64,000 bases of DNA from positions 62,001-126,000 of IMG/VR virus record IMGVR_UViG_3300019458_000021; one strand, 5' to 3'. Positions 2,545 to 55,941 of this stretch are shown here, in pieces. The notes under the pieces are model-generated. The model saw nothing but the letters and a program-made list of their open reading frames with translations. It had not been told where the DNA came from and ran no database searches. Position 1 is the first letter of the stretch. Each line of letters begins with the position of its first letter. Made by a program: the position numbers and the translations under genes.

Positions 2545-3330
2545 ATGAAGATAGCAATATGCCTCGCCGTGATGCTTATGATTCTTTCATCGTTCATCAC
2601 TGCACCTTGCACGGCTCAGATGAACTACGAAGGAGCTGTTACCGTTTCAAGAAACGGCAAGTCCTTCACATTTTCAAGCATCGCGGTTCAAAATCTAAAA
2701 GTGTTGCGAGAAGTTGCAGTGGATATGGGCGCAGACGTTCACATTCCAACTCTTCAAGCAATCATGATGACTGAAACACATGCAGGAACCGGTGGGTCAA
2801 TTGGATTGCCGCGCGCGCACCCAACTCGTAGATCATACGGTTGGATGCAGTTAACGATTCCAACAGCAAGAGTGCTGTTCCGAGACCTCGCCGACTTGCG
2901 GATGAAGTATTTTGGCGAGCGGGTTCTGAAATCTGTGAAAGACGCAGAAATCAAGAAACTGCTTCTAACAGACTGTCGGCTCAACGTCCGTCTTGGGATT
3001 CTGTTGTACGTTCAATATCTCGATATGGTCAAGAAGGAATGGGCGCGAGCTGTTGCTGGATATAACATGGGTATCGGCAATGCCTTGAAGCGAGCTCACG
3101 CGCCAAAGAGCGTTTATGTTGTCAAGGTTCGGAACTGGATACCTTTGGTAACTGCAATGACTGAAGAGGTTACGAAAGCGGAACAAATTGTTCTGGTTGC
3201 CTATTCGTCAACCTTGCCGGAAAATTGGCTGGGCATAAAAGGTACTTTACAAGGAGAACAAGATGGCCAAAAAGAGCAAAAAGCAGCCGAAACCTTCACA
3301 AGAGCAGAGTGTTACAAAAGTTGTCAATGA
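2545..3330 (+). CDS. Exported lytic transglycosylase (SLT family)
   Basis: Signal peptide MKIAICLAVMLMILSSFITAPCTA; motifs AIMMTETHAG (catalytic E), SYGWMQL, AVAGYNMG; SD AGGAGG. Confidence 0.85.
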   Translation: MKIAICLAVMLMILSSFITAPCTAQMNYEGAVTVSRNGKSFTFSSIAVQNLKVLREVAVDMGADVHIPTLQAIMMTETHAGTGGSIGLPRAHPTRRSYGWMQLTIPTARVLFRDLADLRMKYFGERVLKSVKDAEIKKLLLTDCRLNVRLGILLYVQYLDMVKKEWARAVAGYNMGIGNALKRAHAPKSVYVVKVRNWIPLVTAMTEEVTKAEQIVLVAYSSTLPENWLGIKGTLQGEQDGQKEQKAAETFTRAECYKSCQ

Positions 3331-6089: not shown

Positions 6090-6118
6090 TTGATGTTTTG
6101 CGAAGAGTCGGGTATAAT
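6090..6118 (+). promoter_or_regulatory. Sigma70-type promoter of the DNA polymerase operon
   Basis: TTGATG-17 nt-TATAAT, then SD AGGAG and ATG at 6141. Confidence 0.75.
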
Positions 6119-6140: not shown

Positions 6141-8852
6141 ATGAGCTATATTTCGGCAGCAACAATAGAAGACGACGTCATTGTGTGGGAGCGTGATGAG
6201 AACGGACAGAGAATCGAAACAGTTTACACAGCTCCTTACCTGTTCTACTACAACGATCCCAAGGGAAAACACGAAACAATCTACGGCGATAAAGTCTCTC
6301 GTGTAATTTGCACAAGCAAGCGTGACTTTGAAGATAAGGTTGGTCTCTATAAAGGCCGAGGACATACAGTTTATGAGACAGACATCGAGCCTCACTTCCG
6401 TGTGTTATCAACGGACTACTACAACAAACCTGCACCTAAACTTAACGTAACATTTTACGATATTGAAGTCGACTACGATCCAGCGTTAGGCTTTGCAGGG
6501 GTCGAAAATCCTTACGCAAAAATCAACTCAATGTCGCTATTCCATAAATGGTCACAGGAGCTAATCGTACTAGCTGTTCCTCCGGAGTCTGGATGGACGG
6601 AAGAACGGCTAATCGAAGAGATGACCAAGCAGGTTCCTGATGCACCGATCCCGAAAGAATACAAACTCACAATTATTCTTTGCAAAGAAGAGACGGAACT
6701 GCTCCTGAATTTTCTCGACCAGATAGAGGATTCAGACGTGTTGTGTGGATGGAACAGCTCAATGTTCGATTCACCATACACAGCAAAGCGACTTGAAAAT
6801 CGCCTGGGCAAACGTTACATGGCGAAGATGGATTTCAATGGAACACGACTTCCTTGGTTTAGAAAGGTTCCATCTCGAAAGATTCGCAACCGTGACGGTA
6901 CACCAAAGATCATCGGAACAACGCTTGAAACGGCTGGTCGGATCATGGCTGACTACATGGAGTTGTATAAGAAATACGAAGCGGGAGAACGAGCTTCGTT
7001 TAAGTTGGCTGCTATTGAGCAGGAGGTCGGTTTGAATCTTCCGAAACTCGAATACAAAGGAACCTTGCACAACCTCTACCGAAACAACTTTGCATTCTTC
7101 ATTCGATACAACATTCGAGACACCGAAATCCTTCACGGATTCGAACGTGTGCTTGGCTACGTTGAACTTGCAAACCAAATGTACCACTTGTCAACGGGTG
7201 TGTTCAAACATGTGACAGGAACGCTGAAGCTCGTAGAAGCATCAATTCTTAACTATTGCCATCATGTTGTGAATAAGGTAGTTCCGAATAGCGTCTCACC
7301 AGAAAACGATCGCCAAATTGATGGAGCTTTAGTCTTGTTCCCACAGATTTCCCTCCAAGAATTCACAGGCTCGATTGACATCAACTCTCTGTATCCAACA
7401 GCAATCCGCTCAATCAATATTTCCCCGGAAACACTCAAAGGCCAGTTTGATGAGTTCAATCGCGCTGTTGAAGAAATTCGCATGCGCTCGTTTGCAACAC
7501 TCACACTTCGACTTGAAACTGGTGAAGTGTTAACAAAAGAAGCTTCCGAATGGCGTGAGTGGCTTAAAGAACGGATGTGGTCTGTGTCTGGCTACGGGAC
7601 TGTGTTTGATCAAAACCAACAAGGAATTGTTCCGTCTATTCTTGCAGACTGGTACAAGCAACGTAAAGAGTATCAGAAACTGATGAACGAAGCTCTTACA
7701 CAAGGCGAGAAAGAAAAGGCTGACTACTATGATCGTTTACAGTATGTGTACAAGATTAAGCTAAACTCAGCCTATGGAGCTCTGACAAACATCAACTTCC
7801 GTTTCTTTGACTTGCGGTTAGGGGAGAGTGTGACAGCTACAGGTCGAATGATTCTCCGACATCAGTGTCGGAAGGTCGCTGAGTTCCTCGATGGAGAGTA
7901 CGACGTCGACTTTCCACAATATGAGACAATCAAAGATTGTAACGAGGCGAACAACAAAAAAGGTGTCCCACACGAACTTGCCTTGAATGGTCCAAAATTC
8001 AATGGTAACTTTATGTGCGAATCGGTAATTTACGGAGATACGGACAGCACATACTTTAAGACACACGCAACAAACGTTGTAGATGCAGTGAAAATTGCCG
8101 ATCGGGTTGCACTTGAGGTCAACAACTCGTACAAACCGTTTGTACAAGAGGTGTTTTTGTGTAATCCAGGCTTCGATGATCTCGTTAAGTGTGGTCGAGA
8201 AATTGTGACTGATAAAGGAATTTTTGTTGACAAAAAGCGTTACATTCTTCATGTTGTTGACAAAGAGGGTAAACCATCGGATAGTATGAAAGTCATGGGT
8301 CTTGATACCAAGAAGACCACGCTACCAAAGCACGTGGCCGACGAATTGAATAAATACGTCGGGATGTTCCTAAAAGGAATGCCTTGGGAACAAGTAGCAG
8401 AATTGATAGTCAACTATAAGGATACTCTTCGCAGTCAAGCTAAAGAAGAGATTCAGTTGATTGGATTACCGAAAGGGATCCAGGAAGTAGAAGACTATCA
8501 ACAGCAGTACAAGCGGTTGGGTGATCAAGTTCGATTACCTGGCCACGTGGCTGCAGCAATTCACTACAATTTGCTGTTGAAACATTTCGATGATCGTGAG
8601 AGTATGCCGATCATGTCGGGTATGAAGATCAAAGTCTTCTATCTGACACAGATGAACGGCAAGTTCAAAAGTATTGCTTTGCCAACTGACATCGAAGTTG
8701 TTCCACAGTGGTTTTTTGACAACTTTGAAGTAGACATAGATGCGCATATTGAGAGGTTGGTTGACAATCCGATGCAGAACATTCTAAAAGCAATCGGAAA
8801 GCGAACACCAACTCGACACGACTTGATGGTTGAAGACGTTTTTGGCTTCTAG
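6141..8852 (+). CDS. gp43: Family B DNA polymerase (T4 gp43-like)
   Basis: Exo motifs FYDIEVD, GWNSSMFDSPY, YNIRD; pol motifs DINSLYP, KIKLNSAYG, YGDTDS, KKRY; C-terminal VEDVFGF resembles a clamp-binding tail. Confidence 0.97.
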   Translation: MSYISAATIEDDVIVWERDENGQRIETVYTAPYLFYYNDPKGKHETIYGDKVSRVICTSKRDFEDKVGLYKGRGHTVYETDIEPHFRVLSTDYYNKPAPKLNVTFYDIEVDYDPALGFAGVENPYAKINSMSLFHKWSQELIVLAVPPESGWTEERLIEEMTKQVPDAPIPKEYKLTIILCKEETELLLNFLDQIEDSDVLCGWNSSMFDSPYTAKRLENRLGKRYMAKMDFNGTRLPWFRKVPSRKIRNRDGTPKIIGTTLETAGRIMADYMELYKKYEAGERASFKLAAIEQEVGLNLPKLEYKGTLHNLYRNNFAFFIRYNIRDTEILHGFERVLGYVELANQMYHLSTGVFKHVTGTLKLVEASILNYCHHVVNKVVPNSVSPENDRQIDGALVLFPQISLQEFTGSIDINSLYPTAIRSINISPETLKGQFDEFNRAVEEIRMRSFATLTLRLETGEVLTKEASEWREWLKERMWSVSGYGTVFDQNQQGIVPSILADWYKQRKEYQKLMNEALTQGEKEKADYYDRLQYVYKIKLNSAYGALTNINFRFFDLRLGESVTATGRMILRHQCRKVAEFLDGEYDVDFPQYETIKDCNEANNKKGVPHELALNGPKFNGNFMCESVIYGDTDSTYFKTHATNVVDAVKIADRVALEVNNSYKPFVQEVFLCNPGFDDLVKCGREIVTDKGIFVDKKRYILHVVDKEGKPSDSMKVMGLDTKKTTLPKHVADELNKYVGMFLKGMPWEQVAELIVNYKDTLRSQAKEEIQLIGLPKGIQEVEDYQQQYKRLGDQVRLPGHVAAAIHYNLLLKHFDDRESMPIMSGMKIKVFYLTQMNGKFKSIALPTDIEVVPQWFFDNFEVDIDAHIERLVDNPMQNILKAIGKRTPTRHDLMVEDVFGF

Positions 8853-8861
8853 GAGTTTACG

Positions 8862-9827
8862 ATGAAGTGGTATGAACTGCTCATGATTGCAGTTTTAGGC
8901 GTGTTCCTTAACACGAACGGGTACGCCTTCGAAACCGAGGCTGTGCAAGAGGTGGAAATTTCGACGGTCGTGCAACCTCCACATCTTGAAAGGATCACCG
9001 TTGAGACGCAGGTCGTTCCTTTCAAGATCAATGCCAAATACGCACTTGTAATCGATCAAACAACAGGCGAAATCCTTTACGCAAAGGGCGCGGACACAAT
9101 TGTCCCAATTGCTTCAATCACCAAGCTGATGACTGCTGTTGTGACGCTTGATGCTAGTCTCGATCTTGAAGAAACGATCCAAATCTCACAGGAGGAAGTT
9201 AATGCGACAATGCTTCGCGGTCGGGTAACAAGCAAATCGTTGCCGATGGGTGCGACATTGTCCCGCGCTGAGCTTCTCCATGTTACGTTGATGAATTCTC
9301 AGAACCGTGCAGCCGTGGCACTGGCTCGAACCTACCCAGGCGGTACAGAAGCGTTCGTTGCCGCTATGAACCGCAAAGCTGAGATGCTCGGGATGAAAGA
9401 TACCAACTTCACAGATCCAGCTGGCCTGTACAATACAAACGTGTCCTCAGCAATTGATTTAGTAATCCTCCTCAGACATGCTGAGGATTATGTTTTGATT
9501 CGTGACTTCAGCACATCAGAATCGTTTGCGCTATCGATGTACTCAAAAAAGAAAAGGCGTCCACACCTTGTGAAGTTCGGAACAACAAACCGACTTGTTC
9601 GCAACGATAGCTGGGATATCGTTGTTCAAAAGACTGGTTATATTCGCGATGCTGGTCACTGCGTTGCCATGACGGCAAGAACTGTCACAAACACCATTTC
9701 GATCATCCTGTTGAACACAACGAACAACACTGCGCGCGCCAATGATGCGATTCGAATCAAACACTACATCGAGACAGGTGAAATTCTTCAACCAATGAAG
9801 GCAAAACGCAAAAAACGTCGAGCATGA
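8862..9827 (+). CDS. pbpG: D-alanyl-D-alanine endopeptidase, peptidase S11 (PBP7/PbpG-like)
   Basis: Signal peptide; intact SxxK (PIASITKLMTA), SxN (MNSQNRAA) and KTG (QKTGYI); YPGG..AFV.AMN.KA..LGM and YIETG segments as in PbpG. Confidence 0.92.
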   Translation: MKWYELLMIAVLGVFLNTNGYAFETEAVQEVEISTVVQPPHLERITVETQVVPFKINAKYALVIDQTTGEILYAKGADTIVPIASITKLMTAVVTLDASLDLEETIQISQEEVNATMLRGRVTSKSLPMGATLSRAELLHVTLMNSQNRAAVALARTYPGGTEAFVAAMNRKAEMLGMKDTNFTDPAGLYNTNVSSAIDLVILLRHAEDYVLIRDFSTSESFALSMYSKKKRRPHLVKFGTTNRLVRNDSWDIVVQKTGYIRDAGHCVAMTARTVTNTISIILLNTTNNTARANDAIRIKHYIETGEILQPMKAKRKKRRA

Positions 9828-10267
9828 AGACACTTTACACATCCTATTACGCACGGTCTGGCAAGCGACCAGGCGCAATCTCGATCAGTGCCAAAGCCCC
9901 ATTCTTCTACAAGGGTGCTGCTCGCATTGACCTTGCTCCGTCATGGGAACTACTTCGTGCCTACAAAGACGGAACGGTCGATGCATATGGTTACACGGAA
10001 TGGTTCGGACGCTTGTTAAAGGAACGAAACCTAACTCCAAAGGCGGTGATCGATAGTCTTCCAGAACACTCAATCATGTTGTGTTACGAAAAGGTTGGTG
10101 ACTTTTGTCATCGTCACATTGTCGCTGTTTGGTTGAATCAATCCGGGTTGGCGCAGGTTTATGAGCTGGAAAAAGATGGGTCATCGATGCAATCGCCCAC
10201 AAGTATCGATGATCTTATTCACTTGTTGGCCGTTGATGTGAAGGAGGAAACATCAGACAATACCTGA
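9824..10267 (+). CDS. DUF488-like protein
   Basis: YTSYYA, ISIS, LAPSWELL and LCYEK..DFCHRHIVA motifs. Confidence 0.75.
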   Translation: MKTLYTSYYARSGKRPGAISISAKAPFFYKGAARIDLAPSWELLRAYKDGTVDAYGYTEWFGRLLKERNLTPKAVIDSLPEHSIMLCYEKVGDFCHRHIVAVWLNQSGLAQVYELEKDGSSMQSPTSIDDLIHLLAVDVKEETSDNT

Positions 10268-10288
10268 TTGAACAATAAAGGAGTTCAA

Positions 10289-11002
10289 ATGAAACTCTCC
10301 CCCCAAGACCTAGCCTACATTCTCAACGTCGTCCAGACGGCCGCACTGGTTAAGATCGACAAGATCATTATCGAACCAGGCAAGATTCGCGGTGCAGATG
10401 AAGATCGTTCCATTGTAATGTTCCAAACTGACAACGTTCCAGCATTTGAGTTCGGTTCAATCGGCTTAAACCGCATCGATGTGTTACAATCTCGATACGA
10501 TATCGCTAAGAGCTGTGATAATGTTGAGGTAGAAGTGATTCCGGCTGGTGATTTTGCACGCGCATTAGTTTTCAAAGGCAAGGGAGTCAAGTTAGATTAC
10601 CGAGCCGCAAATCCAGCAACACTACACGACTCTACTCCCAAGCAAATGAACGATCCCGCCAAGTACCGTATCCAAATGTCAGCGGACGCAGTATTGAAAA
10701 TGGTTCGTGGAGCTTCGGCCATGAAGACCGACGACGTTCAATTTGTTAGCGACGGCAATGGAGTGGTGTTCAATATGGAAGATGTTGTGAACCGTGACAT
10801 GTTCACATGTGAGTTTGCACAAAAGACAGATGTAGCGAGCCTCGATGGTTCCCCCATCAAATTCTCGTATACATACCCGATCAAGAACCTCTTGGTTCTG
10901 TTGAAGCAGAACCCGGAAGGATACATTTATCTGACAGAACGAAAAGGGATTCTAAAGGTTGTTGTCAACCAACTCGATCTGTACATCCCACCAAGGACAT
11001 AA
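10289..11002 (+). CDS. Probable DNA polymerase sliding clamp (gp45-like)
   Basis: ~237 aa, alternating beta/alpha pattern, position between polymerase and RNase H; ATG 10289 after SD AAGGAG. Confidence 0.55.
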   Translation: MKLSPQDLAYILNVVQTAALVKIDKIIIEPGKIRGADEDRSIVMFQTDNVPAFEFGSIGLNRIDVLQSRYDIAKSCDNVEVEVIPAGDFARALVFKGKGVKLDYRAANPATLHDSTPKQMNDPAKYRIQMSADAVLKMVRGASAMKTDDVQFVSDGNGVVFNMEDVVNRDMFTCEFAQKTDVASLDGSPIKFSYTYPIKNLLVLLKQNPEGYIYLTERKGILKVVVNQLDLYIPPRT

Positions 11003-11003
11003 T

Positions 11004-11465
11004 ATGTGGCCACTTAAAAAGCCAAGCCGACCAACGATTGAAGAGCAACTTGCGACTATTGGCAATCGCCTCGACGCTCAAGACGCGGAAAAACAACGAT
11101 TGGAACGCGAGAAGGAAACACTTGAGCGAAAGAATAAGGAACTGTTGCAATCAATTGAAGAACTACGAGCAACGGTTACGCTCTTGGCAGAAGAAACAAA
11201 CAAACGCAAAGCTCGTTATGAAGCAAAAGAACCGTGGATCGAGATTGCAAGTGATGGGTTTGATGAAGTCAAGGGAATTGCACTTGGCCTAGATTGGAAC
11301 GATGCAATGATCCAGTACCTGAAAGACAATGGTATCACTGGGTCAAGTGACGAGGACGTGATGCGTAAGTACATTGCATTCCTGTACGAAGACCTAGTAG
11401 GAAAACTTGAAGCAGCCGTCACGGAACAATCAAGCTCTAAAGGCAAGATTGCAGATTTCGAATGA
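11004..11465 (+). CDS. Conserved phage hypothetical protein, coiled coil
   Basis: ATG at 11004; N-terminal coiled coil then EPWIEI...LDWNDAMIQYL..NG. Confidence 0.75.
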   Translation: MWPLKKPSRPTIEEQLATIGNRLDAQDAEKQRLEREKETLERKNKELLQSIEELRATVTLLAEETNKRKARYEAKEPWIEIASDGFDEVKGIALGLDWNDAMIQYLKDNGITGSSDEDVMRKYIAFLYEDLVGKLEAAVTEQSSSKGKIADFE

Positions 11466-12373
11466 TGAAATATCTTGTGTTTGACATCTCGAACATGCTG
11501 TATCGGACGTTCTTCGCCCACAAAGACCAATCAGATACAACAATCGCTGGTCTTGCAACACACTCTGCATTGATGACACTCAACAAGTACTTCCGACAGT
11601 ACAAGCCGGATCGTGTCGTTATGGCGTTTGATCACTCAAGCTGGCGGAAAGATTACACAGCAAGTGAATTGTGCATTTCTCAGAAACCGTATAAGGGCAA
11701 TCGGCGCAAGGACATGTCGCCTGCTCAGCAGGCAAAATACGAGCGGTTCTGCGGCCACCTGAAAGAGTTTGAGTCATTGATTACAAACCACTCAACGATC
11801 ATTTCTCTCGCTGGTGAGAAACTCGAAGCCGACGACCTGATTGCAGGATTTTGTGAAGCACACCAGAACGATGATATCACACTAATCAGTAGTGATAGTG
11901 ACATGCTTCAACTCCTACGCTTCCAGAATGTTAAGATCGTTTCACCGGCAACAGACAAGGAAGTAACGTTGGAAGAATATAACCACGATCCGAAGTACTA
12001 TCTGTTTGTCAAGTGCATGCGTGGTGATTCAACTGACTACATTCAATCTGCACTGCCACGGGTTCAATCAAAGCGACTCGAAAAGGCGTACAAGGATCCT
12101 TTCGAGCGGGTTCAGCTGATGCAAGAGTTCTGGATCGACCCGAAAACAAAGACAGAGTTTAAGGTGCAGGATCTCTACGAAGAAAACATCATGCTAATCG
12201 ATTTAACACAGCAACCCGATCCAGTTCGCCGCCGAATTTTTGCTGTTGTTGACGAAGCTGTGAAGAAAGAGCGAAAGTATTCGCACTTCCATCTGATGCG
12301 ATACTTGGGTAAGTATGAGCTTGAAGTGATTGCAAAACAGTTGGATACCTTTCTACCACTGTTGAGCCAATGA
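11462..12373 (+). CDS. rnh: 5'-3' exonuclease / RNase H (T4 Rnh, FEN-like)
   Basis: YLVFDISN, AFDH.SWRK, YKGNR, LEADDLIA, ISSDSDMLQL, GDSTD.I motifs. Confidence 0.92.
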   Translation: MMKYLVFDISNMLYRTFFAHKDQSDTTIAGLATHSALMTLNKYFRQYKPDRVVMAFDHSSWRKDYTASELCISQKPYKGNRRKDMSPAQQAKYERFCGHLKEFESLITNHSTIISLAGEKLEADDLIAGFCEAHQNDDITLISSDSDMLQLLRFQNVKIVSPATDKEVTLEEYNHDPKYYLFVKCMRGDSTDYIQSALPRVQSKRLEKAYKDPFERVQLMQEFWIDPKTKTEFKVQDLYEENIMLIDLTQQPDPVRRRIFAVVDEAVKKERKYSHFHLMRYLGKYELEVIAKQLDTFLPLLSQ

Positions 12374-12900: not shown

Positions 12901-13392
12901 TCATTTCTTCGCCTCCGGTGGTAGTGCAGCATCAAGATCTGCCTCATCCACACCAACCGTTGGTGGAGTAGGACGCAATGGCCTCTGAACTGACTGAAGT
13001 CGTTGATAGCCAGTTGGCTCATAGCCTCCATTTCCGTTACCGTTTCCATTGTTGCTGTTGAAACCACCGTAACGCGCGGAGACAAACTTGCTCCAAGCTT
13101 CAATTGCACCTACATATGCCAAGTAGATCATCAGATAATCCGGCGTCATCTTTTCCTGCAATGTCAGTTTGACAATCAGCCACGTACCAACGATCCCGCC
13201 AATCAGTTGTAGTAACTTCGTCAAACTAACAAAGTTCGTTCCTTTCATCGTGATCAGGTCGGTCCAGACTAGATTCTTTTGGCGATTCGCTTTGTAGAGC
13301 AAGTAGAAGAAAAACAAGCCCAAAAACAGAATGAACGCCCCGTACATATCGAGGTTGATTACTGGTAGCATGTCAACGACTTTTTCTAACAT
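12901..13392 (-). CDS. Membrane protein with 3 hydrophobic segments (holin candidate)
   Basis: ATG 13392 after SD AAGGAG; segments YGAFILFLGLFFFYLLY, LLQLIGGIVGTWLIV, YLMIYLAYVGAI; late motif upstream. Confidence 0.6.
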   Translation of the reverse strand: MLEKVVDMLPVINLDMYGAFILFLGLFFFYLLYKANRQKNLVWTDLITMKGTNFVSLTKLLQLIGGIVGTWLIVKLTLQEKMTPDYLMIYLAYVGAIEAWSKFVSARYGGFNSNNGNGNGNGGYEPTGYQRLQSVQRPLRPTPPTVGVDEADLDAALPPEAKK

Positions 13393-13415
13393 TTGGGGTC
13401 TCCTTATGATGTGCA

Positions 13416-13465
13416 TATTTAGGGTGTGTCGTGGGGTGTTCCTATTGGAGAAAAATACCTAAATA
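13416..13465. promoter_or_regulatory. Divergent pair of late promoter motifs
   Basis: TATTTA 13416-13421 (minus strand) and TAAATA 13460-13465 (plus strand). Confidence 0.6.
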
Positions 13466-13527: not shown

Positions 13528-13818
13528 ATGCCACCAGTTGTACGTTTAGGTGATGTCTGCACGGGTCATGGTTGTTGGCCACCACGTCCAAATGACCAAG
13601 GATCGCCCAATGTGTTTGCAAATGGAATTCCAGCCCACCGGCTGGGTGATCACTGGTCAACACACTGCTGTCCAAGCCTTCCGGAATGTCATGACAGTAA
13701 CCTCGCAGGAGGAAGTCCAAACGTGTTCGTAAACGGAATTCCATGGGGTCGTATTGGTGATGCAGTAGCATGTGGATCCGCATGTGCCCAGGGTAGTCCA
13801 AACGTGTTTGCAAACTGA
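13528..13818 (+). CDS. PAAR-repeat spike tip protein (T4 gp5.4-like)
   Basis: VRLGDVCTGH, three GSPNVF.NG repeats, PAHRLGD, RIGD..ACGS. Confidence 0.92.
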   Translation: MPPVVRLGDVCTGHGCWPPRPNDQGSPNVFANGIPAHRLGDHWSTHCCPSLPECHDSNLAGGSPNVFVNGIPWGRIGDAVACGSACAQGSPNVFAN

Positions 13819-19815: not shown

Positions 19816-22800
19816 CTAGTCATCAAATATACCAGCAACTTCCAACACACGAATACCGTGCAAAGCTACCCAGGAGGTCTTAAAGATCTCACGGTATTTA
19901 GATTTCACGGACAATGCATCTAGCAGACAGTTAAACCAAATGTTGTTGACGTGTTCTGTACCAAATGTGTTGTAGATTGCATCCATTGCTGTGGCAATAT
20001 TCTCAGACGTGTCAAACGAGAACGTTGCAAAGAACGAGTTGATGTCTAGTGGATAAAAGTCGTTGTTCGGATCCTCGAGATACGCAATGACCGTTTGCAG
20101 CGACAATGTACCATCGGTGAATGACTGATCAACACCAAGACCGTATTGTGTATCCGTGCCAGAAATCTCATCATACAGCGTGCGCTCCAACGCTGGGACA
20201 CGAACGCTTGGATCAGCGAGCTTGTAGCCAATCAACGATTCCGTTAGACGGTCCCACAGACGGCGGTCAATGTTAGCCCCCTGGCTGCGACGAATTGCAA
20301 GCCATTCTTCATGCTTGTTTTTGAGGTTCAACGGTGTCGGACCGTCATCAAGAGTGTCACGAAGTGTCAGATCCCGTGTAAATCGCACTTCATAGCGATC
20401 ATCCGTTCGAATAAAGTCCGCAGCCTTACGAATGATCGCTTGGCGATAGAACACTGGAATAACAGGGTATTGATCATAGATCCAAGGCGCTGAATAAATG
20501 ATGCCAAATGTGATACCGTATCCGAACCGGTCCGCCAAAGTTGGATCATCTTCTGGACGCTGTACAACAAGATATAGCGTTGGAATCTGTTCGATCTGTT
20601 GGGCAACTTGGATCAAAGGCAATGCATCATTACGATCCTCGATCTTGTTCAATCGATTTTCAACCCAAAAGTAGAACAATGAACGCGTAACGTTGTCAAT
20701 TGTTACAACACGTTGTGTGTATTCGGTCTGTTGCTTGAATTGCGTGTGTGTTGTTCCGTCATCTGTCGTATCTGGGTCAAACGTAATCTGTTCTTCTGTG
20801 AGAACAGGAATTGGACGTACGACCGTCACAATATCGTTGATTGTGAGAGAGGTTGAATTCGAGATCTCCAGCGAATTATCAACAACAAGACCTGTTTCCA
20901 CGACAACTCCGTTCACATACATGTTGACAACATCACCAGAAGCAAACAAGTCGCTGTCAAGCGTAAATGTCGCAGGAACCGGAAGTGTATACCCGTCAAT
21001 AATTGGAATGATTTTTTGCGACACAATCGGTTTACGCACCCAAGATGTTGCTTTGAATGCTGGAACAACTTCTAGTGTTCCAATGCCGGCCGTACCGTAT
21101 TCGAACGGCGTACCATTTTCCGTGTCGCTTAGTTTGGTAATTGTTGATGTTGTACCCAGTGTTGCAAAATACTTTGTTGAACCAGCAAGCGTTGTAGTTG
21201 TTGTTAATGGAAGTTGCAGGTCGAATGTTGTGATCACAATCGTGCTTTCCACAGCTTCAACTGTTGTTGGTACACCTGTGAGAGCAGTTTGCATCAAAGC
21301 TGCAAGCTGTGTAACTGTCGTTGATGCAGAAGTAATTGTGATCGTGTAGTCGATTGCCGCTCCACCATTCACAGCGAGGGTAAAGTCATAGCTGCCAATA
21401 GCCAAATTTGTCAACGTTGTTGGTACTACTGCCGGTGTATCATAGAAAGTAACCGTTGCAATGGCTGGTGATGTTTCAAACACCGCTGGAACGACCGTAA
21501 TCGTTACAACCGCTGTCATCGAAGTTGCTAAACTGTCAAACAAGTCTGGATTAGCACCCGTTGTCGGACGAGTTGGTGTAATTGTTCCATTAACGACTAA
21601 CACTACTTCATCGCCTATGCTCAACGTGTTCACGCCAGCAATTTCATCGGTGCCGACGTTCACAGTCGCTGAAATTGGTGTACGTTCACGGAAGAAAGTT
21701 GTCATTCGTGGGGTACCAGTGATCTTGTCGTTTGACGCAATTGCTGTGTCATTGGTCTCATCAACAGCTGTTGCAGCCCATTCCTCAGGTGTGAATTGGC
21801 TTTCAACCCATTGATACACACGAACGTCGCCCCAATCCGCCAAACGACCCCAGTTGTAGAGGCGGTCGTTGAGATCCGGTAGGACAACATCGTCATAGTA
21901 CGGACGATATGCAAGCGTTGCTGTATCAAGCCACACTGTTTGTGTTTCAGCCTGATTCCATGGCTGTTGTGAGATGTCATTTGGATTCAACGTATTCGTA
22001 TACAGAGCTGGATCGACAGCATTTTGAATGTCAACATTATGAACGGCTGTGGGTGAGTGATATCCTCGAGCTGGATCCCACATCGGAACATTGGTCAGCA
22101 CCGTTCCGGCAACGTAATCGATGATCTTCGCAGGACTATTCTTTGTCTTACCTGGGTTGATCGTGAAGATCATGATAATGTCAGTGAAACCAGTCGTTGT
22201 AAACCGGATCACTTCCGAATTGATTCTTGAGAACTCATCTGCACCTGTGCCTTCAATCATATACGCTGTTGTATAGTTGCGTAAATCACCAGCAACAACA
22301 AGATCACGGTTGGTTACACGAACTGTGTCTGCAAAAGTTGGCAGCTGTATGTAGATATCACCGGCAACAGTTGTAATTTTGACTGGTACGTCAGTTGTCT
22401 GAACCCATTGTGTTCCATCCCAAATGAAGATGAAGCCAGTCGACTTTTCATACCACATGTCAACCGTTTCTTCGCCAGCTGTTGGAACAACATCAGAAGC
22501 ATAGATTGTTGTGAGAGTTGTCACCTGACTGTCTAAAAACAGGATTGAATTATCGAGCAACACCCGTTGCTCGGGCGCATCAATCCAACGGTCTTGATTG
22601 CTAAATGTTACAATCTTGAATCCCATTGCCTCATCAGCCTCAACCTGTGCCGTGTCTGATGCTTCTGTATCTGTCAAAAACTCGAGACGAACGTCATCGA
22701 CTTGGCCATCAGACGCAAACAATTTGATTTCTGGATACACACGCGGACGAACATCTCCAAATTGAGCAATCTTCCAAGCCCAAAACTCGTCGATTTTTGC

Positions 22801-25800
22801 GTCAACAAATCGACGAGAGTTGATGTACGCCTTGATTGCATTTGTTGATCCTTTTGCTTGGATCATACCGCGGTAGAAGACAAACTGTGTTTTTGCATTT
22901 GTGTTCAACAGATCCAAATATGGCTGTGAACCGGCACGGTAACCAAGCAATTGACGAGAGTTGAGACCAACCTTCGTAAGTTCCTTCAGCCCGTATGTGT
23001 CATAGTAGTTCTGCGAATCGACGGTCTGGCCTTCAATGTTGCGACGGTATTTGCCGCCGAGCAAGTAATATCCACCTAATGTTGGACGAAGTGAAAAATC
23101 GTTCTTTTCGTAGAAGTCCATGCCAAATCGCTGTGCTGTTAATCCGAGGAATGAATCGTACAGAATTTGATTGCTTGTTGTGTAATCGTTGAACAAACAA
23201 ATGTGCTCGTATCCTTCGATAAACAAGTGCGCTCCACCCATGTGAATATAGTTGTATGGGTCAGCGGTAGAGATTGATGGTGGAACAGTGTCGTTAGGAA
23301 GTTCTGTTCGCATTGCAAGACGGCTCTGTTTGTCTTCACGGAACACCAACAACTTATCAGCACTGATTGGCCGTGCATACTGGTCAAAGATCGTTTGCTG
23401 AACACGAATGTCTGCATACGGTCCTTGAACAACGTCCGAAAGAACACCTTGAGGCGTGTCAATCCACACATTGTTCCGAGCCGCATTCAACTCAAACGAT
23501 GGGAATGAAATCGGACGGCTTTGTGGAGCAATAAACATCACCCCACTGCCGTTTGTGAGAACGTCAACGATGCTTGCGTTCAACATGCGTGTGGTTGATA
23601 ACCTGAACTCACCTGACACGCCGGTCGGATTATAGTAGTATGGTGTGTTCGCGATGAACGGTTCTGGCAGAAGACCTGTTGATGACATTAAGATAGCAGT
23701 TCCTGGTTGCCACATTGGCACCTGACCTGAGAACGTCATGGTATTTGCGGCCAAGTCTGTCACAGTGAATTGATATTTGTCAGCAACGCTCATGCGTGTA
23801 CGACGTAGTCGGAACGCCCAATCGATGAATCGTTCTTCTTCAAGCTGCCAGTTAACTGTGCGTCCTGTTTCCGGATCCAGCTCTGTGAAGTCGCTCAAAT
23901 TGTACAAGACGCCAATGTCTTTCTGGTAGGCTGCGTAGCCGTCGATGATGTTAATCAGTCGCTGAATACCAGCGATCGAGTAAGGAGGAATAAACGTTCG
24001 AACCTTTGTCTTGTCCAGTGCATAGTGATACCAGATTTCTGTTGAAGGGCCCGCACCTCCAAACACTTGGAATGATGAATCGACTTGACCAACATTAAGA
24101 TCTCCTGTACCAGTTGTTGTCCACACAAAAGGAACACCAGCCAGCGCTGCATTTGGACTTTCTGCAACTCGGAACTGTCGATTGTTCAGTCGGATAATGT
24201 ACAATGGTTGATTCGGAACCAACGGAGCTGGTAACAATTTTGATGAAGTTACGAACACAAGATCGCCAGTTTGCCACGGTAGAACACTTAACGGAAAGTC
24301 AATCAAACCATTTGCGATTGAACTTGGTAGTGGTTCAAGTGTTGTGATTCTTGTCCTGTCAACCGATGGATCGTAAATCGAAGCAACAACGGTATAGGAA
24401 CCATCATTTCCTGTTGAGTTGATAACGTCAAATTCTTGATCCGGAGGAAAATCTGTCACATGATCACCATCAACCTCAAGCAGATTCGATACAGACAGTG
24501 CACCTGTAATTGTATAGCGGAAAATCGTTGCAGTGTTCGTAAGAATATCAACCGTGAACGGATAGTTGATCACGTCATAGTAGGAAACGTCGCGAGGAAT
24601 TGACGCAAGCGTTTCGATTTCAAGTTTCCACTGAGTTTGACTGTTGTACTGAACAAGTTGTGGTGGCATATTCAAGACAACGACTTCAAACGCATCTGAC
24701 CACATGTCTTTGATCACACCCATATTTGCGAGCAATACGTTGTAGTCTTGTGGACCAACATCAAAGTACTTGTTCGAAACTTCGAGAGTTGATGTGTCAA
24801 TAATGCCGGAGAATTGATAGGACAATAATGGATCCCAAGCTGTCCACAAAATACGGAATTCTTTGTTCGTGTCGTAGCCAACGAATCGGTCATAGTTCAC
24901 ATACCACTGGTTCAATCCTCGTGCTAGGAATGAGACGTCATTGTTGTAAATGTCGCCGTGGAACAGTGCGTCTTCGTGGTTGTACACCTGACAGAATGTT
25001 GGATCGATCTGAAGGTTGTTGACACGTATAAAATCAATGCCCCACGCATAGTGCATGAAGCGAACAGGTTGCATTCGAAATGCAATCACTAGTGGATCGT
25101 AAACATGCTCACCGGAAACCAACCACTGCCATTCTACAGGACCGCCGTCTCCAAACGCATAGTTCGCTCCAGGGGCAACAATCTCAGTCGACAAACTTGT
25201 GAAGAACGAGCGAACAATTGATGAAACGGTAGTGTAATACGGTGGCAACAGATCATCCGGTGCATAGTTGCCTTGAATTACACCGTCACTGATGTTGACG
25301 GAGAAATAGTTGTACACCAGCGTCACTTGGCCTGGTAGACCAGTTCCCGGCGAACCATCCGGAGCAGTACCACCCACAGGAATGGTACCAACACGAATAT
25401 TCTCCCACATACCAGTTGTTGTGCCGTGGTTGTAAATCCATCGACGGGTGCCGTTGGTTTCAAGGTAGAACGCATCCCACCAGTCAGGTTTGTCCGCAAA
25501 TCCCTGGAGTTTCCATGGCTCGAGATGTGGGTAAGGTGTATTGTACCATAGCGTGTAAAGCTGTTGCCAAGACCCTGCCAACCCAGGCGAAATCGAGAAC
25601 GTTGGTGGTGTAGTCAAGTTGCTATACACATAGTTCCATGTGAACGCATCTGACGGATTATACAACACATTTTCGAACGGTGCACGAATACGGCGAGCGG
25701 CGACAAATGCAAAGAATTGGTCTTCGGTATATTCATCGAAGAATGCTTGTTCACTTACATCGGGAGTTAACGATGAGTAATCGAATGCCGTTTCAGCGAA

Positions 25801-28800
25801 GTCAGGCGTAACAGCATGCAATTGTTCTTCGATTGAAAGGATTGTGTTTGCCAATAGCGCGCGCATATCAACTTGTTGCCATGCAATTGAGATCTCGCCA
25901 GCAGGTGCTGCAGCAACCCAAGAAACACCGTTCCATTCAAACAGTTGGTTAAATGTGGTGTTCCAGTACAAGGCACCAATTGGAACGCCAGCCGATGATG
26001 GCGCAACGGGCGAAACAGCAATCACGTTGAAGCGATACAAAACACGAGGCGCAATAGTCTGATACCAGTAAACACCGTTTCGAATCACACCAAACTCTGC
26101 AACGAACGTTGTTAGTGGGCAGCCAGGTGGTAATATGAACGGAAGCGTTGACATGAAACATGGTGGCGCTGTCGTAGAAATCTTTCCAAGAGTACCGTTT
26201 GTTACTCGCGTGTCCGGTAAACTACACAAAATACGTGCGATGCTATCTTCTTCGGCGGCTGTGAAATCAATACCCGAACGATGACCGTCGTGATGTAGAA
26301 TTTGATAGATGTTCAACTTCGAATCGATGTCTACAATCGGTTTTGTCTTTGGTCCGAGTGCAAACATTGGAACTGTTGCAACCCAATGACGTACACCAAT
26401 ATCGGTTACATTGTCGAACGCACTTGTATCAACATACACTTGGCCGTAGAAGTCGTTCGCTTCATAAGCGTCTTGAATCGTTTCGTTGATGAATCCTTGC
26501 AAGTCTGTGATTGTTTCCGTGTTGATTGTTGACAACATTGTCAACACGTTCTTCGTGTATAGTTCTTTAATCGCTAACAACAATGATGCATACTGTTGTT
26601 GTGCAAAATCAATGATGCCCAACGGGGTCACAACAGTCTCATTTACTGCAGAAATCAGAGTATCATAACTATCATTGTGCTCCTTGATCGTACCACCCAA
26701 CGAATAGTTGAACGACCCCTGCGTCAAAGCAGAAACTGTTCCGCCTGGGAATGCAAATGGATTTGGTTGTTCAGCAATGATTGATCGGAAATGTGAGACA
26801 AGCTCTGAGTAGGCAACAACCGCGCGGTTGTGATGCTCCGGATTGAATCGCCACTGATCAGGTATTTCCCAGTCACCAGTAGGATCGCCAACAGGCAGAG
26901 GATTTCGATTGCCGTCGACCCATTCGGGAATGTAAACACCACCAGTCCAATCGCTAGGTGGACCAGAAGTTCCGTTTGTGTATTGCGGGACGCTACGCCA
27001 AATCGTCGTCAGTGTTGGATCAGCTCCTTCGATACAAACAACCGGTGTTAGAAGGGAATCGTCCTGTTTCGGCTGAGCTTCTGTTGACCATGTGGTGCCA
27101 TTAGATCGGAAGACAATCTGCTGTTCGGGATCATAGTAAATGCTGTTAACAATTGTGACAAGATATGCAGGAGGATCTGTGCCAACAAACGGTGCATGCG
27201 TTTCAAAGCGATCGTTCGCATCTTGAATGACAAACAACGATTGCCATGCGTCACCATCCCATTGTTTTAGGACTTGTGTGCTGGTGTTATACCAGTAATC
27301 ACCCGACTGCACACGACCATCATGCAGGCGATAGCCGTAGATCTGACCATTATCTTCTGCAAGTAGGAACTGTTCGAATCCAAACTCCCGGCCACCATCT
27401 GAAACTGTAATACGCTTCTGAACAGAACGATTGATTGGCGCCGATGGATCTTCTTGGAAAGAAAAAATTGGCGATGCTTTGATGATTTCTCCCGTGCAGA
27501 CATTGTACACGTTGAACAACGGATACTGATTGATCAATATCTTGGCTTGTTCGTTTCGTTTGTATGTTTCACGTGCAAGATATTCTGGTTGAGTACCAGC
27601 AATCACAGCTGCAAGGAATGTCACTTCATCTTCAATTGTACGAACAGGAACATACTGTAGACCCATGTCACTCAACGAAGCCGGACCAACTTCAATGCGA
27701 ACAATGTCATATTGTGTCAGTGGTGTTGTAAAAATGATCTGCGTTACATAACCGAACGTTTGAGAAGTGTAGATGCTTGTACCGACTACCGTATAGTCCG
27801 GAGTACCGACAGTTGTTGTTTCTACATACTGACCATACTGACGAACATCGTTAACATATACACGAAGTTGGTCTTGTCCGGCAAGCGCAAACAGGGAACG
27901 GCCAGTCGTAATTGTACCAGAAGCGTTTGCTGCAGCAGGAATTGTTTCGTTGACGACAATGTTTGTATTCAGACCAACGTTTGTTGCCGACAATACTGTG
28001 TAGATGCCGTCGCCACCGCCCGTGTTGTCTGGAATGACAAACGACATGTTTGGGAAAAAGAATGATGCAAAATTGCCTGTAATTTGCCATGTTCCGTTAA
28101 CACCCACGATCACACCATTGATCGTAAATGCTGTCTCATTGATGAATTGGAATGAGGCATCGAGAGGGATAGTCGTTACGCCAACGCCCGTGACTGTTGT
28201 CTCTTGGAAATACTGGCCAACAGTCATTGGACCAATAGCTGGATTGCCGAAGAATGAGTATGGATCGCCGTCTTCTATCGCACGACGGAGCAGCGGGTTA
28301 CCGACAATCGATCCTTCCGCAGTAGTCACTTGTGATGCGGTGTTCATAACCCAATGAACATGATAGCCGCGCCAGGTGTCGCCAAGACTTGTCAAGCTCG
28401 GTTCAAGTCGTAAGTGTGTTGGACCACCACCGGTTGGGTACGTTGCAAAAAATACATCAACAGCTGGACCAGCCTCAATCAGTTTCACAATTGTTACCAT
28501 ATAGCGGCCTTGGACATCCGCTGGATCAGTTGGACCTCCTTCACGGTAAATTGAGTAGTCGACGGTGAATGTATTGTTCGTCACCGGCAGATCAGACTTC
28601 ACTAAAAAGTGAAAACCCGGAACAAATGTGTCTGTATAGTTTGTGTCACGCGCCTCAGTTTCTGACTTGTCAAACAAGTACAAGAACCATTCTGTGCCTG
28701 CCCCACCCCTGGTCAGCAATCCAGCCTTTGACTGGCTCAAGTTCAAGTCGTGTTGGCTGGCTAGTTGTTGCTGAAAACACACCACTTGTTGTTGGACGAT

Positions 28801-54336: not shown

Positions 54337-54361
54337 TCTCACTTAGCTAGGAGCTAAAACA

Positions 54362-55809: not shown

Positions 55810-55835
55810 ACAGTGGATCTTCACGAAGCAGCTAT

Positions 55836-55867
55836 AAAAATCCCCGTTTTTCGCCGGGGATTTTTTT
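55836..55867 (+). terminator. Intrinsic terminator after the capsid gene
   Basis: AAAAATCCCCG...CGGGGATTTTTTT, 26 nt after the -1 frame stop at 55809. Confidence 0.85.
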
Positions 55868-55941
55868 ATCAACTGGGAAACTCCGTGGATTACCCTTCCG
55901 ATATAGCGTATACTCAGAAATCTATAGGGAGAAAACACCAG

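What the first reader, a model, noticed from the sequence alone, without database searches (positions are those of the whole stretch)
8862..9827. Intact PBP7/PbpG-type penicillin-binding protein directly behind the phage DNA polymerase
All three serine-PBP motifs (SITK, SQN, KTG) and a signal peptide are intact, and the SD overlaps the polymerase stop codon. Phage peptidoglycan peptidases are normally Zn-dependent (M15/M23) or CHAP; an S11 serine PBP is a host cell-wall gene and unusual in a lytic phage. It would also be a beta-lactam target or sink. It carries an extra basic tail (MKAKRKKRRA). The QKTGYI variant suggests a proteobacterial, possibly betaproteobacterial, donor/host (recollection, not a search).
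Basis: partly seen in the sequence, partly recalled or inferred. Interest (0 to 1): 0.7.

Follow-up and report, generated by a model that had tools for sequence, protein, structure and literature searches.

The report
Jumbo-phage penicillin-binding cell-wall peptidase
An uncultivated clade of ~350-kb "jumbo" phages from caves and other habitats carries, directly behind its DNA polymerase gene, an intact exported PbpG-like enzyme that bacteria use to cut cell-wall cross-links. This suggests the phages reshape the host wall during infection, and nobody appears to have studied it.

Summary
Window 8862-9827(+) encodes a 321-aa Peptidase_S11 protein with SITK, SQN and KTG motifs, an N-terminal hydrophobic helix and a polybasic tail. 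Its ribosome-binding site overlaps the polB stop codon. It is not a chimera: the same junctions occur in independent assemblies, and 11 of 11 diverged relatives examined keep polB→S11. These phage proteins form one well-supported clade grouping with proteobacterial PbpG. The best bacterial matches are betaproteobacterial, at 39-51% identity. S11 divergence tracks that of the neighbouring clamp gene, so the gene is old and inherited vertically, not a recent host capture. The closest cultured phages (XacN1, RsoM2USA) lack it. Two deeper S11 lineages occur in other complete 330-383-kb phages, and at least 479 IMG/VR contigs encode a relative. S11 genes are therefore recurrent in uncultivated jumbo phages, yet I found no paper on them. 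The genome also has a separate cytoplasmic GH108 endolysin. My best reading is a periplasmic DD-endopeptidase made together with the replication genes that loosens host peptidoglycan during infection. The biochemical identity is secure. The biological role is inferred.

The parts
8862..9827 (+). S11 (PbpG-like) low-molecular-weight penicillin-binding protein gene, 321 aa including the stop codon
   Evidence: ORF. Pfam PF00768 E=1.4e-53. NCBIfam NF008668 at 246.5 bits. Fold matches 6azi and 6muq with target-normalised TM 0.91 and 0.85.
8862..8930 (+). N-terminal hydrophobic segment (aa 1-23), read as a Sec signal peptide or signal anchor with a likely GYA|FE cleavage site
   Evidence: AF2 helix at residues 3-21. 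Kyte-Doolittle 3.11 over 11 residues. 54 of 57 clade members have a comparable segment. Inferred; no signal-peptide predictor was run.
8931..9026 (+). Acidic, low-confidence linker (aa 24-55). An extended N-terminal region is shared with L005, P0002 and P0005 and absent from most clade members
   Evidence: Alignment A1. pLDDT 48-55.
9027..9776 (+). Catalytic penicillin-binding domain (aa 56-305) carrying SITK (9114-9125), SQN (9297-9305) and KTG (9630-9638)
   Evidence: SxxK and KTG are present in 57 of 57 clade members.
9795..9824 (+). Polybasic C-terminal tail MKAKRKKRRA
   Evidence: Specific to this clade. Median K+R in the last 20 residues is 7, with 42 of 57 members at 6 or more. Bacterial PbpG has median 4 (9 of 86 at 6 or more) and the other jumbo-phage S11 group has none of 40 at 6 or more. 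Low confidence in the model.
8851..8855 (+). Shine-Dalgarno AGGAG overlapping the polB stop codon (TAG 8850-8852)
   Evidence: Read directly from the sequence.
6141..8852 (+). Family-B (T4-type) DNA polymerase, the gene immediately upstream in the same orientation
   Evidence: Pfam DNA_pol_B and DNA_pol_B_exo1; phrog_262 E=1.6e-156.
6090..6118 (+). Sigma-70-like promoter (TTGATG, 17-nt spacer, TATAAT; 10 of 12 matches) ahead of polB. It may drive transcription of polB-S11-DUF488-clamp-RNaseH
   Evidence: Consensus scan and sequence. The only plus-strand terminator-like site between polB and RNaseH lies inside the S11 coding sequence, at 9469-9487. This is a consensus match only.
9824..10267 (+). 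DUF488-N3a gene whose start overlaps the S11 stop. Present in only part of the clade
   Evidence: Pfam PF22751 E=4.2e-7. Present in L005, L009, L174 and L177; absent in L017, L018, L021, L175 and L176.
10268..11002 (+). Sliding-clamp-like processivity factor (the start called in other assemblies corresponds to 10289)
   Evidence: phrog_223 E=1.8e-6. Syntenic in all relatives.
11462..12373 (+). RNase H / 5'-3' exonuclease, the last of the conserved replication genes in the syntenic block
   Evidence: Pfam 5_3_exonuc_N; phrog_107.
2545..3330 (+). A second putatively exported cell-wall enzyme in the same region: a 261-aa SLT-like lytic transglycosylase with an N-terminal signal-like sequence. Its link to S11 is only positional
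   Evidence: Pfam SLT 21.5 bits against a cut-off of 21.3. N-terminal sequence MKIAICLAVMLMILSSFITAPCTA. Conserved in L005 (63%), L009 (53%) and L017, L018, L021 (32-35%).

Best explanation
This is a genuine, long-resident phage gene encoding an exported serine DD-peptidase of the PbpG/PBP7 type (Peptidase S11, single domain). It is probably transcribed and translated together with polB, the clamp and RNase H, that is in the replication phase rather than with a lysis cassette. The N-terminal hydrophobic segment takes the catalytic domain to the periplasm. There Ser85 (SITK), with Lys88, Ser146/Asn148 (SQN) and Lys257 (KTG), attacks D-Ala-containing peptide bonds of the host sacculus through an acyl-enzyme. 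By analogy with PbpG this would mainly cut D-Ala-mDAP cross-links, and possibly terminal D-Ala. The clade-specific polybasic tail probably holds the enzyme on anionic envelope components. The net effect would be progressive loosening or remodelling of host peptidoglycan during the long jumbo-phage infection, ahead of final lysis by a separate cytoplasmic GH108 endolysin. Shown here: gene integrity, family and fold, conserved motifs, conserved synteny, monophyly and co-divergence with the replication module, tail enrichment, and a separate endolysin. Inferred: export, expression timing, substrate, tail function and biological role.
For: Family and fold: Pfam S11 E=1.4e-53; the best NCBIfam model is PbpG, with the next model at 83 bits; 39% identity to E. 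coli PbpG over 260 aa; the best solved relatives are the DD-endopeptidases 6muq and 6azi. Genuine phage gene: an identical locus occurs in ENA, JGI and IMG/VR assemblies. Two cave runs hold the region in one contig at even depth, and a third study holds a 90-99% identical variant with a contig that reaches from the polB end 11 bases into S11. G000 has a T4-type Gp23 capsid and a terminase. Conservation: polB followed by S11 is kept in 11 of 11 lineages examined, with polB down to 52% and S11 down to 43% identity. The phage clade is monophyletic at 100/94 and groups with bacterial PbpG at 99/92. S11 distances correlate with clamp (rho 0.80) and with RNaseH and PolB (0.51). SxxK and KTG are kept in 57 of 57 members. 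Not the endolysin: a GH108+PG_binding_3 protein without a signal peptide lies at G000:25778-26347. Timing: a sigma-70-like promoter precedes polB, the only plus-strand terminator-like hit lies inside the S11 coding sequence, and stops and starts overlap. Other jumbo-phage S11 genes also sit among nucleotide and replication genes: dCMP deaminase, clamp loader, PhoH. A conserved exported SLT-like gene lies 3.5 kb upstream. Precedent for the mechanism: Bdellovibrio secretes DD-endopeptidases that de-crosslink the prey wall (PMC3276566, PMC4686830).
Against: There are no expression data; no RNA run was listed. No enzymology exists and the host is unknown. The NCBIfam PbpG equivalog cut-off is not reached (246.5 against 294), so endopeptidase rather than carboxypeptidase specificity is not established. 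The middle residue of the SxN motif is Q, H or N in the phage clade but E or D in bacterial PbpG, and the consequence is unknown. The promoter is only a consensus match, and there were fewer such matches than in shuffled sequence. Structural genes (a fibre-like protein and PAAR) are interspersed nearby, so the early or middle timing is not secure. An exported wall hydrolase made early could be harmful to the phage unless its activity is limited.
Confidence: 0.55

Rival explanations
1. Lysis accessory or second lysin. The exported peptidase accumulates in the periplasm and acts at the end of infection together with the GH108 muramidase. The polybasic tail would help disrupt the outer membrane or bind LPS.
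For: It is a peptidoglycan-cleaving enzyme. The polybasic C-terminus is specific to this clade, and cationic C-terminal peptides are known in some Gram-negative phage lysins (my own knowledge, not tested here). Secreted endolysins exist (own knowledge).
Against: The gene sits in the polB-clamp-RNaseH block, not beside the GH108 endolysin about 45 kb away in G000. The position is conserved across the clade. The h-region is strongly hydrophobic, unlike the Gly/Ala-rich segments of SAR endolysins.
Confidence: 0.2
2. Superinfection exclusion or competitor exclusion. Remodelling the sacculus of an infected cell would block wall penetration by later-arriving phages, in parallel with the Bdellovibrio DD-endopeptidases that prevent a second predator from entering.
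For: It would be an exported protein of the replication phase, the same pattern as periplasmic exclusion proteins such as T4 Spackle (own knowledge). There is a Bdellovibrio precedent (PMC3276566, PMC4686830).
Against: There is no direct evidence. De-crosslinking should ease wall penetration rather than hinder it. The idea overlaps the main explanation rather than excluding it.
Confidence: 0.1
3. Virion-associated wall-penetration enzyme used at entry.
For: In Erythrobacter phage vB_EliS-R6L an S11-like domain is part of a 755-aa protein in the tail module. A fibre-like gene and a PAAR gene lie within 5 kb here.
Against: It is a small stand-alone protein with an N-terminal export signal, which virion proteins normally lack. 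It is fused to no structural domain and is coupled to polB.
Confidence: 0.05
4. Beta-lactam sink or protection of infected cells from beta-lactams.
For: The intact SxxK, SxN and KTG motifs make acylation by beta-lactams likely.
Against: Low-molecular-weight PBPs bind stoichiometrically and turn over slowly (own knowledge). There is only a weak sub-threshold match to the class A beta-lactamase model (25.5 bits against a cut-off of 200), which gives no support for beta-lactamase activity. Nothing in the cave source indicates beta-lactam exposure. Conservation across a diverse clade argues for a core infection role.
Confidence: 0.03
5. Assembly chimera, or a recently captured host gene with no role in the phage.
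For: GC content of the 1-kb bin holding most of the gene is 48%, against 43-46% in the flanking bins.
Against: The same junctions appear in independent assemblies and runs. Synteny holds in 11 diverged lineages. The best GTDB-genome match to the window protein is about 50% identical. The phage clade is monophyletic.
Confidence: 0.01

Closest known systems
PbpG / PBP7 DD-endopeptidase of Proteobacteria (E. coli b2134; structures 6azi from Enterobacter cloacae and 6muq from Yersinia enterocolitica)
   Same: Single-domain S11 fold (TM 0.91 and 0.85 normalised to the target). SxxK, SxN and KTG motifs. An N-terminal export signal. 39% identity to E. coli PbpG and 39-51% to betaproteobacterial homologues. 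The two groups cluster in the tree.
   Different: It is encoded by a jumbo phage inside its replication gene block. It scores below the NCBIfam equivalog cut-off. The SxN middle residue is Q, H or N rather than E or D. It has a clade-specific polybasic C-terminal tail, and in this phage an extra acidic linker.
PBP5/PBP6 (DacA, DacC) DD-carboxypeptidases
   Same: The same S11 catalytic domain and motifs, matched at E=1e-10 to 1e-17.
   Different: The beta-rich C-terminal domain and amphipathic membrane anchor are absent. Scores are much weaker (58-62 bits against cut-offs of 610-694). These proteins serve as the outgroup on a long branch.
Bdellovibrio secreted DD-endopeptidases Bd0816 and Bd3459 (PBP4/DacB-like)
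   Same: This is a proposed functional analogy. An invader delivers a serine DD-endopeptidase to the victim's periplasm to de-crosslink and reshape the sacculus during occupation (PMC3276566, PMC4686830).
   Different: Per those papers and my own knowledge they are PBP4/DacB-type enzymes, so a different PBP family. The producer is a predatory bacterium rather than a virus. No activity data exist for the phage enzyme.
Other phage S11-like proteins (phrog_5304 'peptidase'; UniProt 'DacC' entries from uncultured Caudovirales; Erythrobacter phage R6L gp77; the 235-285-aa S11 proteins of other IMG/VR jumbo phages)
   Same: S11 fold in viral genomes. The jumbo-phage versions also have N-terminal hydrophobic segments and sit among nucleotide and replication genes.
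   Different: Identity is at most 28% to the BFVD entries and 36-46% to the other jumbo-phage group, which forms two deeper clades. Those proteins lack the polybasic tail and are not next to polB. R6L carries the domain inside a 755-aa tail-module protein.
Canonical phage endolysins (GH108 muramidases, M15/M23/CHAP peptidases, SAR endolysins)
   Same: They also cleave peptidoglycan.
   Different: The catalytic class differs (serine acyl-enzyme PBP). The genomic position is not in a lysis cassette. The genome carries its own GH108+PG_binding_3 endolysin.

Membership tests
Peptidase S11 (Pfam PF00768; low-molecular-weight class C PBPs) | Profile match above the curated gathering score | tested here: met
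   182.3 bits against a cut-off of 27.6, covering profile positions 6-235 of 239.
Peptidase S11 (Pfam PF00768; low-molecular-weight class C PBPs) | Active-site motifs SxxK, SxN and KTG in order and with correct spacing | tested here: met
   SITK at 85-88, SQN at 146-148, KTG at 257-259. The SITK and KTG motif residues, S146 and N148 are invariant in alignment A1; the middle residue of SxN varies. SxxK and KTG are present in 57 of 57 clade members.
Peptidase S11 (Pfam PF00768; low-molecular-weight class C PBPs) | Penicillin-binding / beta-lactamase-like alpha/beta fold | tested here: met
   AF2 mean pLDDT 89.3. Foldseek E=2.8e-28 to 6azi, followed by K15 DD-transpeptidase, PBP5 and PBP6.
Peptidase S11 (Pfam PF00768; low-molecular-weight class C PBPs) | Covalent acylation by beta-lactams and DD-peptidase activity | not testable with these tools
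   Needs Bocillin-FL labelling and muropeptide analysis.
PbpG/PBP7 DD-endopeptidase (NCBIfam NF008668 equivalog) | Score above the curated equivalog cut-off (294 bits) | tested here: not met
   246.5 bits and 248.1 bits. It is the best model by a wide margin but falls below the cut-off, so I describe the protein as PbpG-like and not as a PbpG equivalog.
PbpG/PBP7 DD-endopeptidase (NCBIfam NF008668 equivalog) | Single catalytic domain without the PBP5-type C-terminal domain | tested here: met
   Domain at residues 56-305 followed only by a 16-aa tail. The closest structures are the 252- and 267-residue PbpG-type chains.
PbpG/PBP7 DD-endopeptidase (NCBIfam NF008668 equivalog) | Groups with bacterial PbpG in a phylogeny, apart from DacA and DacC | tested here: met
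   The phage clade plus bacterial PbpG form a clade at 99/92 when rooted on E. coli DacA and DacC. Branching within that clade is unresolved.
PbpG/PBP7 DD-endopeptidase (NCBIfam NF008668 equivalog) | Cleaves D-Ala-mDAP cross-links in intact sacculi | not testable with these tools
   Biochemical assay needed.
Phage endolysin (holin-dependent or SAR) | Located in or co-regulated with a lysis cassette, and the main muralytic enzyme of the genome | tested here: not met
   The gene lies between polB and the clamp gene. A canonical GH108+PG_binding_3 endolysin without a signal peptide lies at G000:25778-26347.
Phage endolysin (holin-dependent or SAR) | SAR-type weakly hydrophobic, Gly/Ala-rich N-terminal segment | tested here: inconclusive
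   The h-region LLMIAVLGVFL is strongly hydrophobic (Kyte-Doolittle 3.1) and is followed by a GYA|FE site. This looks like a cleavable signal peptide, but no predictor or experiment was available.
Class A beta-lactamase | Profile score above cut-off | tested here: not met
   NF033103 gives 25.5 bits against a cut-off of 200.

The most novel reading that the evidence does not exclude
A whole clade of ~350-kb phages runs a replication-phase programme of wall sculpting. A Sec-exported PbpG-like DD-endopeptidase, held at the envelope by a polybasic tail, would de-crosslink and reshape the host sacculus long before lysis. A conserved exported SLT-like transglycosylase encoded 3.5 kb upstream may act with it. 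The outcome could be cell enlargement or rounding, or exclusion of competitors, as Bdellovibrio does to its prey. This would be a host-takeover function not yet described for phages, carried out by a serine penicillin-binding protein and therefore inhibitable by beta-lactams.
Probability: 0.3. Interest if true: 0.75.

Novelty: new variant of a known kind. Interest (0 to 1): 0.55.

Why it matters
Phage wall-cleaving enzymes are normally thought of as late endolysins or virion lysins of the glycosidase, amidase, metallopeptidase or CHAP types. Here a serine penicillin-binding protein is fixed in the replication gene block of a diverse jumbo-phage clade, and related S11 genes recur in other complete jumbo-phage genomes. 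If it acts during infection, it would show that large phages actively remodel the host sacculus, which bears on cell-size control, lysis timing and inter-phage competition. It would also predict a direct, testable interaction between beta-lactams and the phage life cycle. The polB→S11 junction is a handy genomic marker for this uncultivated clade. The polybasic-tailed enzymes are a natural set of Gram-negative envelope-targeted peptidases worth characterising.

Tried and rejected
1. Megablast of the 6.7-kb block against 50,697 phage records gave no match, so no cultured near relative exists.
2. The chimera hypothesis is rejected (and synteny).
3. dN/dS could not be estimated. The held DNA copies of each lineage differ by 0 or 1 nucleotide, and pairs between lineages are 41-57% different in protein, too far for dS. 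Purifying selection is therefore argued from motif conservation only.
4. Expression evidence was sought, but no RNA run was listed.
5. The T4-type late promoter TATAAATA has only 3 sites in 64 kb and none near the gene, which is uninformative.
6. Pfam Phage_lysozyme gave no hit in G000. The endolysin turned out to be GH108.
7. Seven literature searches covered phage or jumbo phage with PBP, D-Ala-D-Ala carboxypeptidase, Peptidase_S11 and PbpG, plus one search for the Bdellovibrio precedent. None found a study of a phage S11 or PBP. The only phage mentions of a D-Ala-D-Ala carboxypeptidase that I opened were bare annotations in Erythrobacter phage R6L and in Limnohabitans phages. A 'pbpG' mention in a jumbo-phage paper referred to the host genome.
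8. I considered functional coupling between S11 and the overlapping DUF488 gene and rejected it, because DUF488 is present in only some clade members.
9. The host could not be identified. There are no tRNAs in the window and no spacer data. A betaproteobacterial host is only suggested by the nearest PbpG relatives.

Full report
THE OBSERVATION

The ORF at window 8862-9827(+) is real and intact: 321 aa with an ATG start. The motifs are SITK (aa 85-88), SQN (146-148) and KTG (257-259). The C-terminus is MKAKRKKRRA. The polB stop TAG (8850-8852) lies inside TAGGAG, six bases before the ATG. The S11 stop overlaps the start of the next gene (ATGA, 9824-9827).

The family assignment is strong:
- Pfam Peptidase_S11 matches at E=1.4e-53, 182 bits against a cut-off of 27.6.
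- The best NCBIfam model is the PbpG DD-endopeptidase equivalog NF008668 at 246.5 bits. This is below its 294-bit cut-off; the next model scores 83 bits.
- PHROGs places it in phrog_5304 'peptidase'.
- It is 39% identical to E. coli PbpG over 260 residues.
- An AlphaFold2 model (mean pLDDT 89.3) shows a helix at residues 3-21, a low-confidence linker to about 55, a confident domain at 56-305 and a low-confidence tail.
- Its best structural matches are the PbpG-type endopeptidases 6azi and 6muq, with target-normalised TM 0.91 and 0.85.

IS IT REALLY PHAGE DNA?

The window is bases 62001-126000 of a 237,379-bp IMG/VR virus record that CheckV rates 68% complete. The identical protein also occurs on a 351,809-bp contig. 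The record encodes a T4-type Gp23 capsid protein and a terminase. It also carries a family-B polymerase, clamp, clamp loader, RNase H and PAAR genes.

The same polB-S11-DUF488 junctions occur in ENA, JGI and IMG/VR assemblies. The source is a cave metagenome. Two runs hold positions 7800-10800 in a single contig at even depth (39x and 13x). A third cave study holds a 90-99% identical variant, with a contig that runs from the end of polB 11 bases into S11. The chimera explanation is rejected.

CONSERVATION AND EVOLUTION

Every diverged relative whose context I examined has S11 directly after polB. These are L005-L008 and L013-L014; L009 and L015-L016; L017; L018; L021; L025; L174; L175; L176; and L177. 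PolB identity falls to 52% and S11 identity to 43% across them.

The contigs reach 355-362 kb, so these are jumbo phages. The closest cultured phages by PolB are Xanthomonas XacN1 and Xoo-sp13 (42%), Stenotrophomonas CM1 and RAS14 (41%) and Ralstonia RsoM2USA (36%). In XacN1 and RsoM2USA polB is followed directly by short genes and then the RNase H-like gene, with no S11.

A careful tree was rooted on E. coli DacA and DacC. It gives three results:
- The polB-linked phage proteins are monophyletic (ultrafast bootstrap 100, SH-aLRT 94).
- They group with proteobacterial PbpG (99/92). Branching inside that group is unresolved.
- The best matches in GTDB genomes are Burkholderiales, Rhodocyclaceae and Gallionellaceae at 39-51%.

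Pairwise S11 divergence tracks that of the neighbouring clamp (Spearman 0.80) and of RNase H and PolB (0.51). For comparison, clamp against RNase H gives 0.58. The pairs are not independent, so this is descriptive. Between the window and its closest relative, S11 has diverged most in the block: 57% identity to L005 against 73-87% for polB, DUF488, clamp and RNase H. Averaged over all ten lineages its divergence equals that of the clamp (mean p-distance 0.52 against 0.50) and exceeds RNase H and PolB (0.37 and 0.39). Together this indicates one old acquisition followed by vertical inheritance, not a recent host capture.

HOW UNUSUAL IS IT?

Among 50,697 deposited phage records only 67 match, all below 50% identity. 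Many of these matches look like host or contaminant DNA. The credible exception is the Erythrobacter R6L/ZS04 pair, where the domain is part of a 755-aa tail-module protein. BFVD holds seven viral structures with this fold, at 28% identity or less, and none has been studied.

IMG/VR is different: at least 479 contigs encode a relative. A set of 235-285-aa S11 proteins (36-46% identity) lies in other jumbo phages. These include complete 329-383-kb genomes with CheckV 98-100%, one with terminal repeats, and PolB 37-41% identical to ours. In those genomes S11 is not next to polB. It sits near dCMP deaminase, clamp loader, PhoH and a metallophosphoesterase. These proteins form two deeper clades in the tree.

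S11 genes are therefore recurrent in uncultivated jumbo phages. My literature searches found no description of them.

CLADE-SPECIFIC FEATURES

The polybasic tail is a hallmark of the polB-linked clade. Counts of K+R in the last 20 residues:

| Group | Median K+R | Members with 6 or more |
|---|---|---|
| polB-linked phage clade | 7 | 42 of 57 |
| Bacterial PbpG | 4 | 9 of 86 |
| Other jumbo-phage S11 group | 3.5 | 0 of 40 |

The SxN motif reads S-Q/H/N-N in the phage clade and S-E/D-N in bacterial PbpG. QKTG(Y/F)I is near-universal in the clade but also common in bacteria. N-terminal hydrophobic segments are present in 54 of 57 members.

MECHANISM

G000 has a canonical GH108+PG_binding_3 endolysin (phrog_315) with no signal peptide at G000:25778-26347. 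S11 is therefore not the main endolysin.

S11 is translationally coupled to polB. It lies downstream of a sigma-70-like promoter at 6090-6118, and the only plus-strand terminator-like site in the block is inside the S11 coding sequence itself. A conserved SLT-like ORF with a signal-like N-terminus lies 3.5 kb upstream, though its Pfam match is marginal.

My best explanation (confidence about 0.55) is an exported DD-endopeptidase made with the replication genes. It would de-crosslink or remodel host peptidoglycan during infection, with the basic tail acting as an electrostatic envelope tether. The nearest functional precedent is the pair of secreted Bdellovibrio DD-endopeptidases that sculpt the prey wall (PMC3276566, PMC4686830).

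The rivals and their confidences are:
- lysis accessory, 0.2
- superinfection exclusion, 0.1
- virion enzyme, 0.05
- beta-lactam sink, 0.03
- chimera or passenger gene, 0.01

The biochemical identity is well supported. Export, timing, substrate, tail function and biological role are inferences.

VERDICT

This is a real and well-conserved gene. It is a new phage-borne variant of a known enzyme kind and a marker of an uncultivated jumbo-phage clade. It is moderately surprising and directly testable.

Noticed in passing
window 54347-55809 (break at 55644): The T4-type Gp23 major capsid gene appears frameshifted. The main frame stops at 55651 and the last ~55 residues continue in another frame (55612-55809). 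Contigs from all three cave runs carry one extra C after 55644 (CC becomes CCC), which restores a single frame. The break is probably an assembly or sequencing error in the IMG record, not biology.
   Followed up: yes
window 2545-3330 (+): A 261-aa SLT-like lytic transglycosylase with a signal-peptide-like N-terminus. It lies two genes upstream of polB and is conserved across the clade (32-63% identity). The Pfam match is marginal, at 21.5 bits against 21.3. It may be a partner of S11.
   Followed up: partly
window 9824-10267 (+): A DUF488-N3a gene whose start overlaps the S11 stop. It is present after S11 in only some clade members, so it has been gained or lost repeatedly. Its function is unknown.
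   Followed up: partly
G000:C1:7227-8510 (-), outside the window (locus L185): A 426-aa isocitrate lyase family protein (Pfam ICL, E=1.7e-106) encoded by the phage. It is a candidate auxiliary metabolic gene, and homologues appear on other S11-bearing viral contigs (L080, L085).
   Followed up: no
L005 4202-8017, L009 4195-7992; G000:C1:31631-33487 (L187): Relatives' polB genes carry an intein with a LAGLIDADG endonuclease (1265-1271 aa), while the window's polB (903 aa) has none. The genome's PhoH-like gene also contains a LAGLIDADG/Hom_end insert.
   Followed up: no
window 12901-13416 (-), 13528-13818 (+): A membrane protein (phrog_1322) and a PAAR-motif spike-tip protein (phrog_281, E=1.9e-34) sit just after the replication block. 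The region therefore mixes replication and structural genes.
   Followed up: no
window 19816-28893 (-): A 3025-aa open reading frame, presumably a giant structural protein. It was not analysed.
   Followed up: no
window 55813-56805 (+): A 330-aa ORF directly after the capsid gene, with paired CxxC motifs. By eye it resembles a mobile endonuclease. It was not scanned against any library.
   Followed up: no
L019 and L064 (IMG/VR 3300024978_000004, 3300003408_000005): A 242-aa S11 homologue (49-50% identity to the window protein) that seems to lack an N-terminal hydrophobic segment. It lies about 5.5 kb from a homologue of the GH108 endolysin (68-69% identity to the G000 copy). Its context differs from both jumbo-phage groups.
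   Followed up: no
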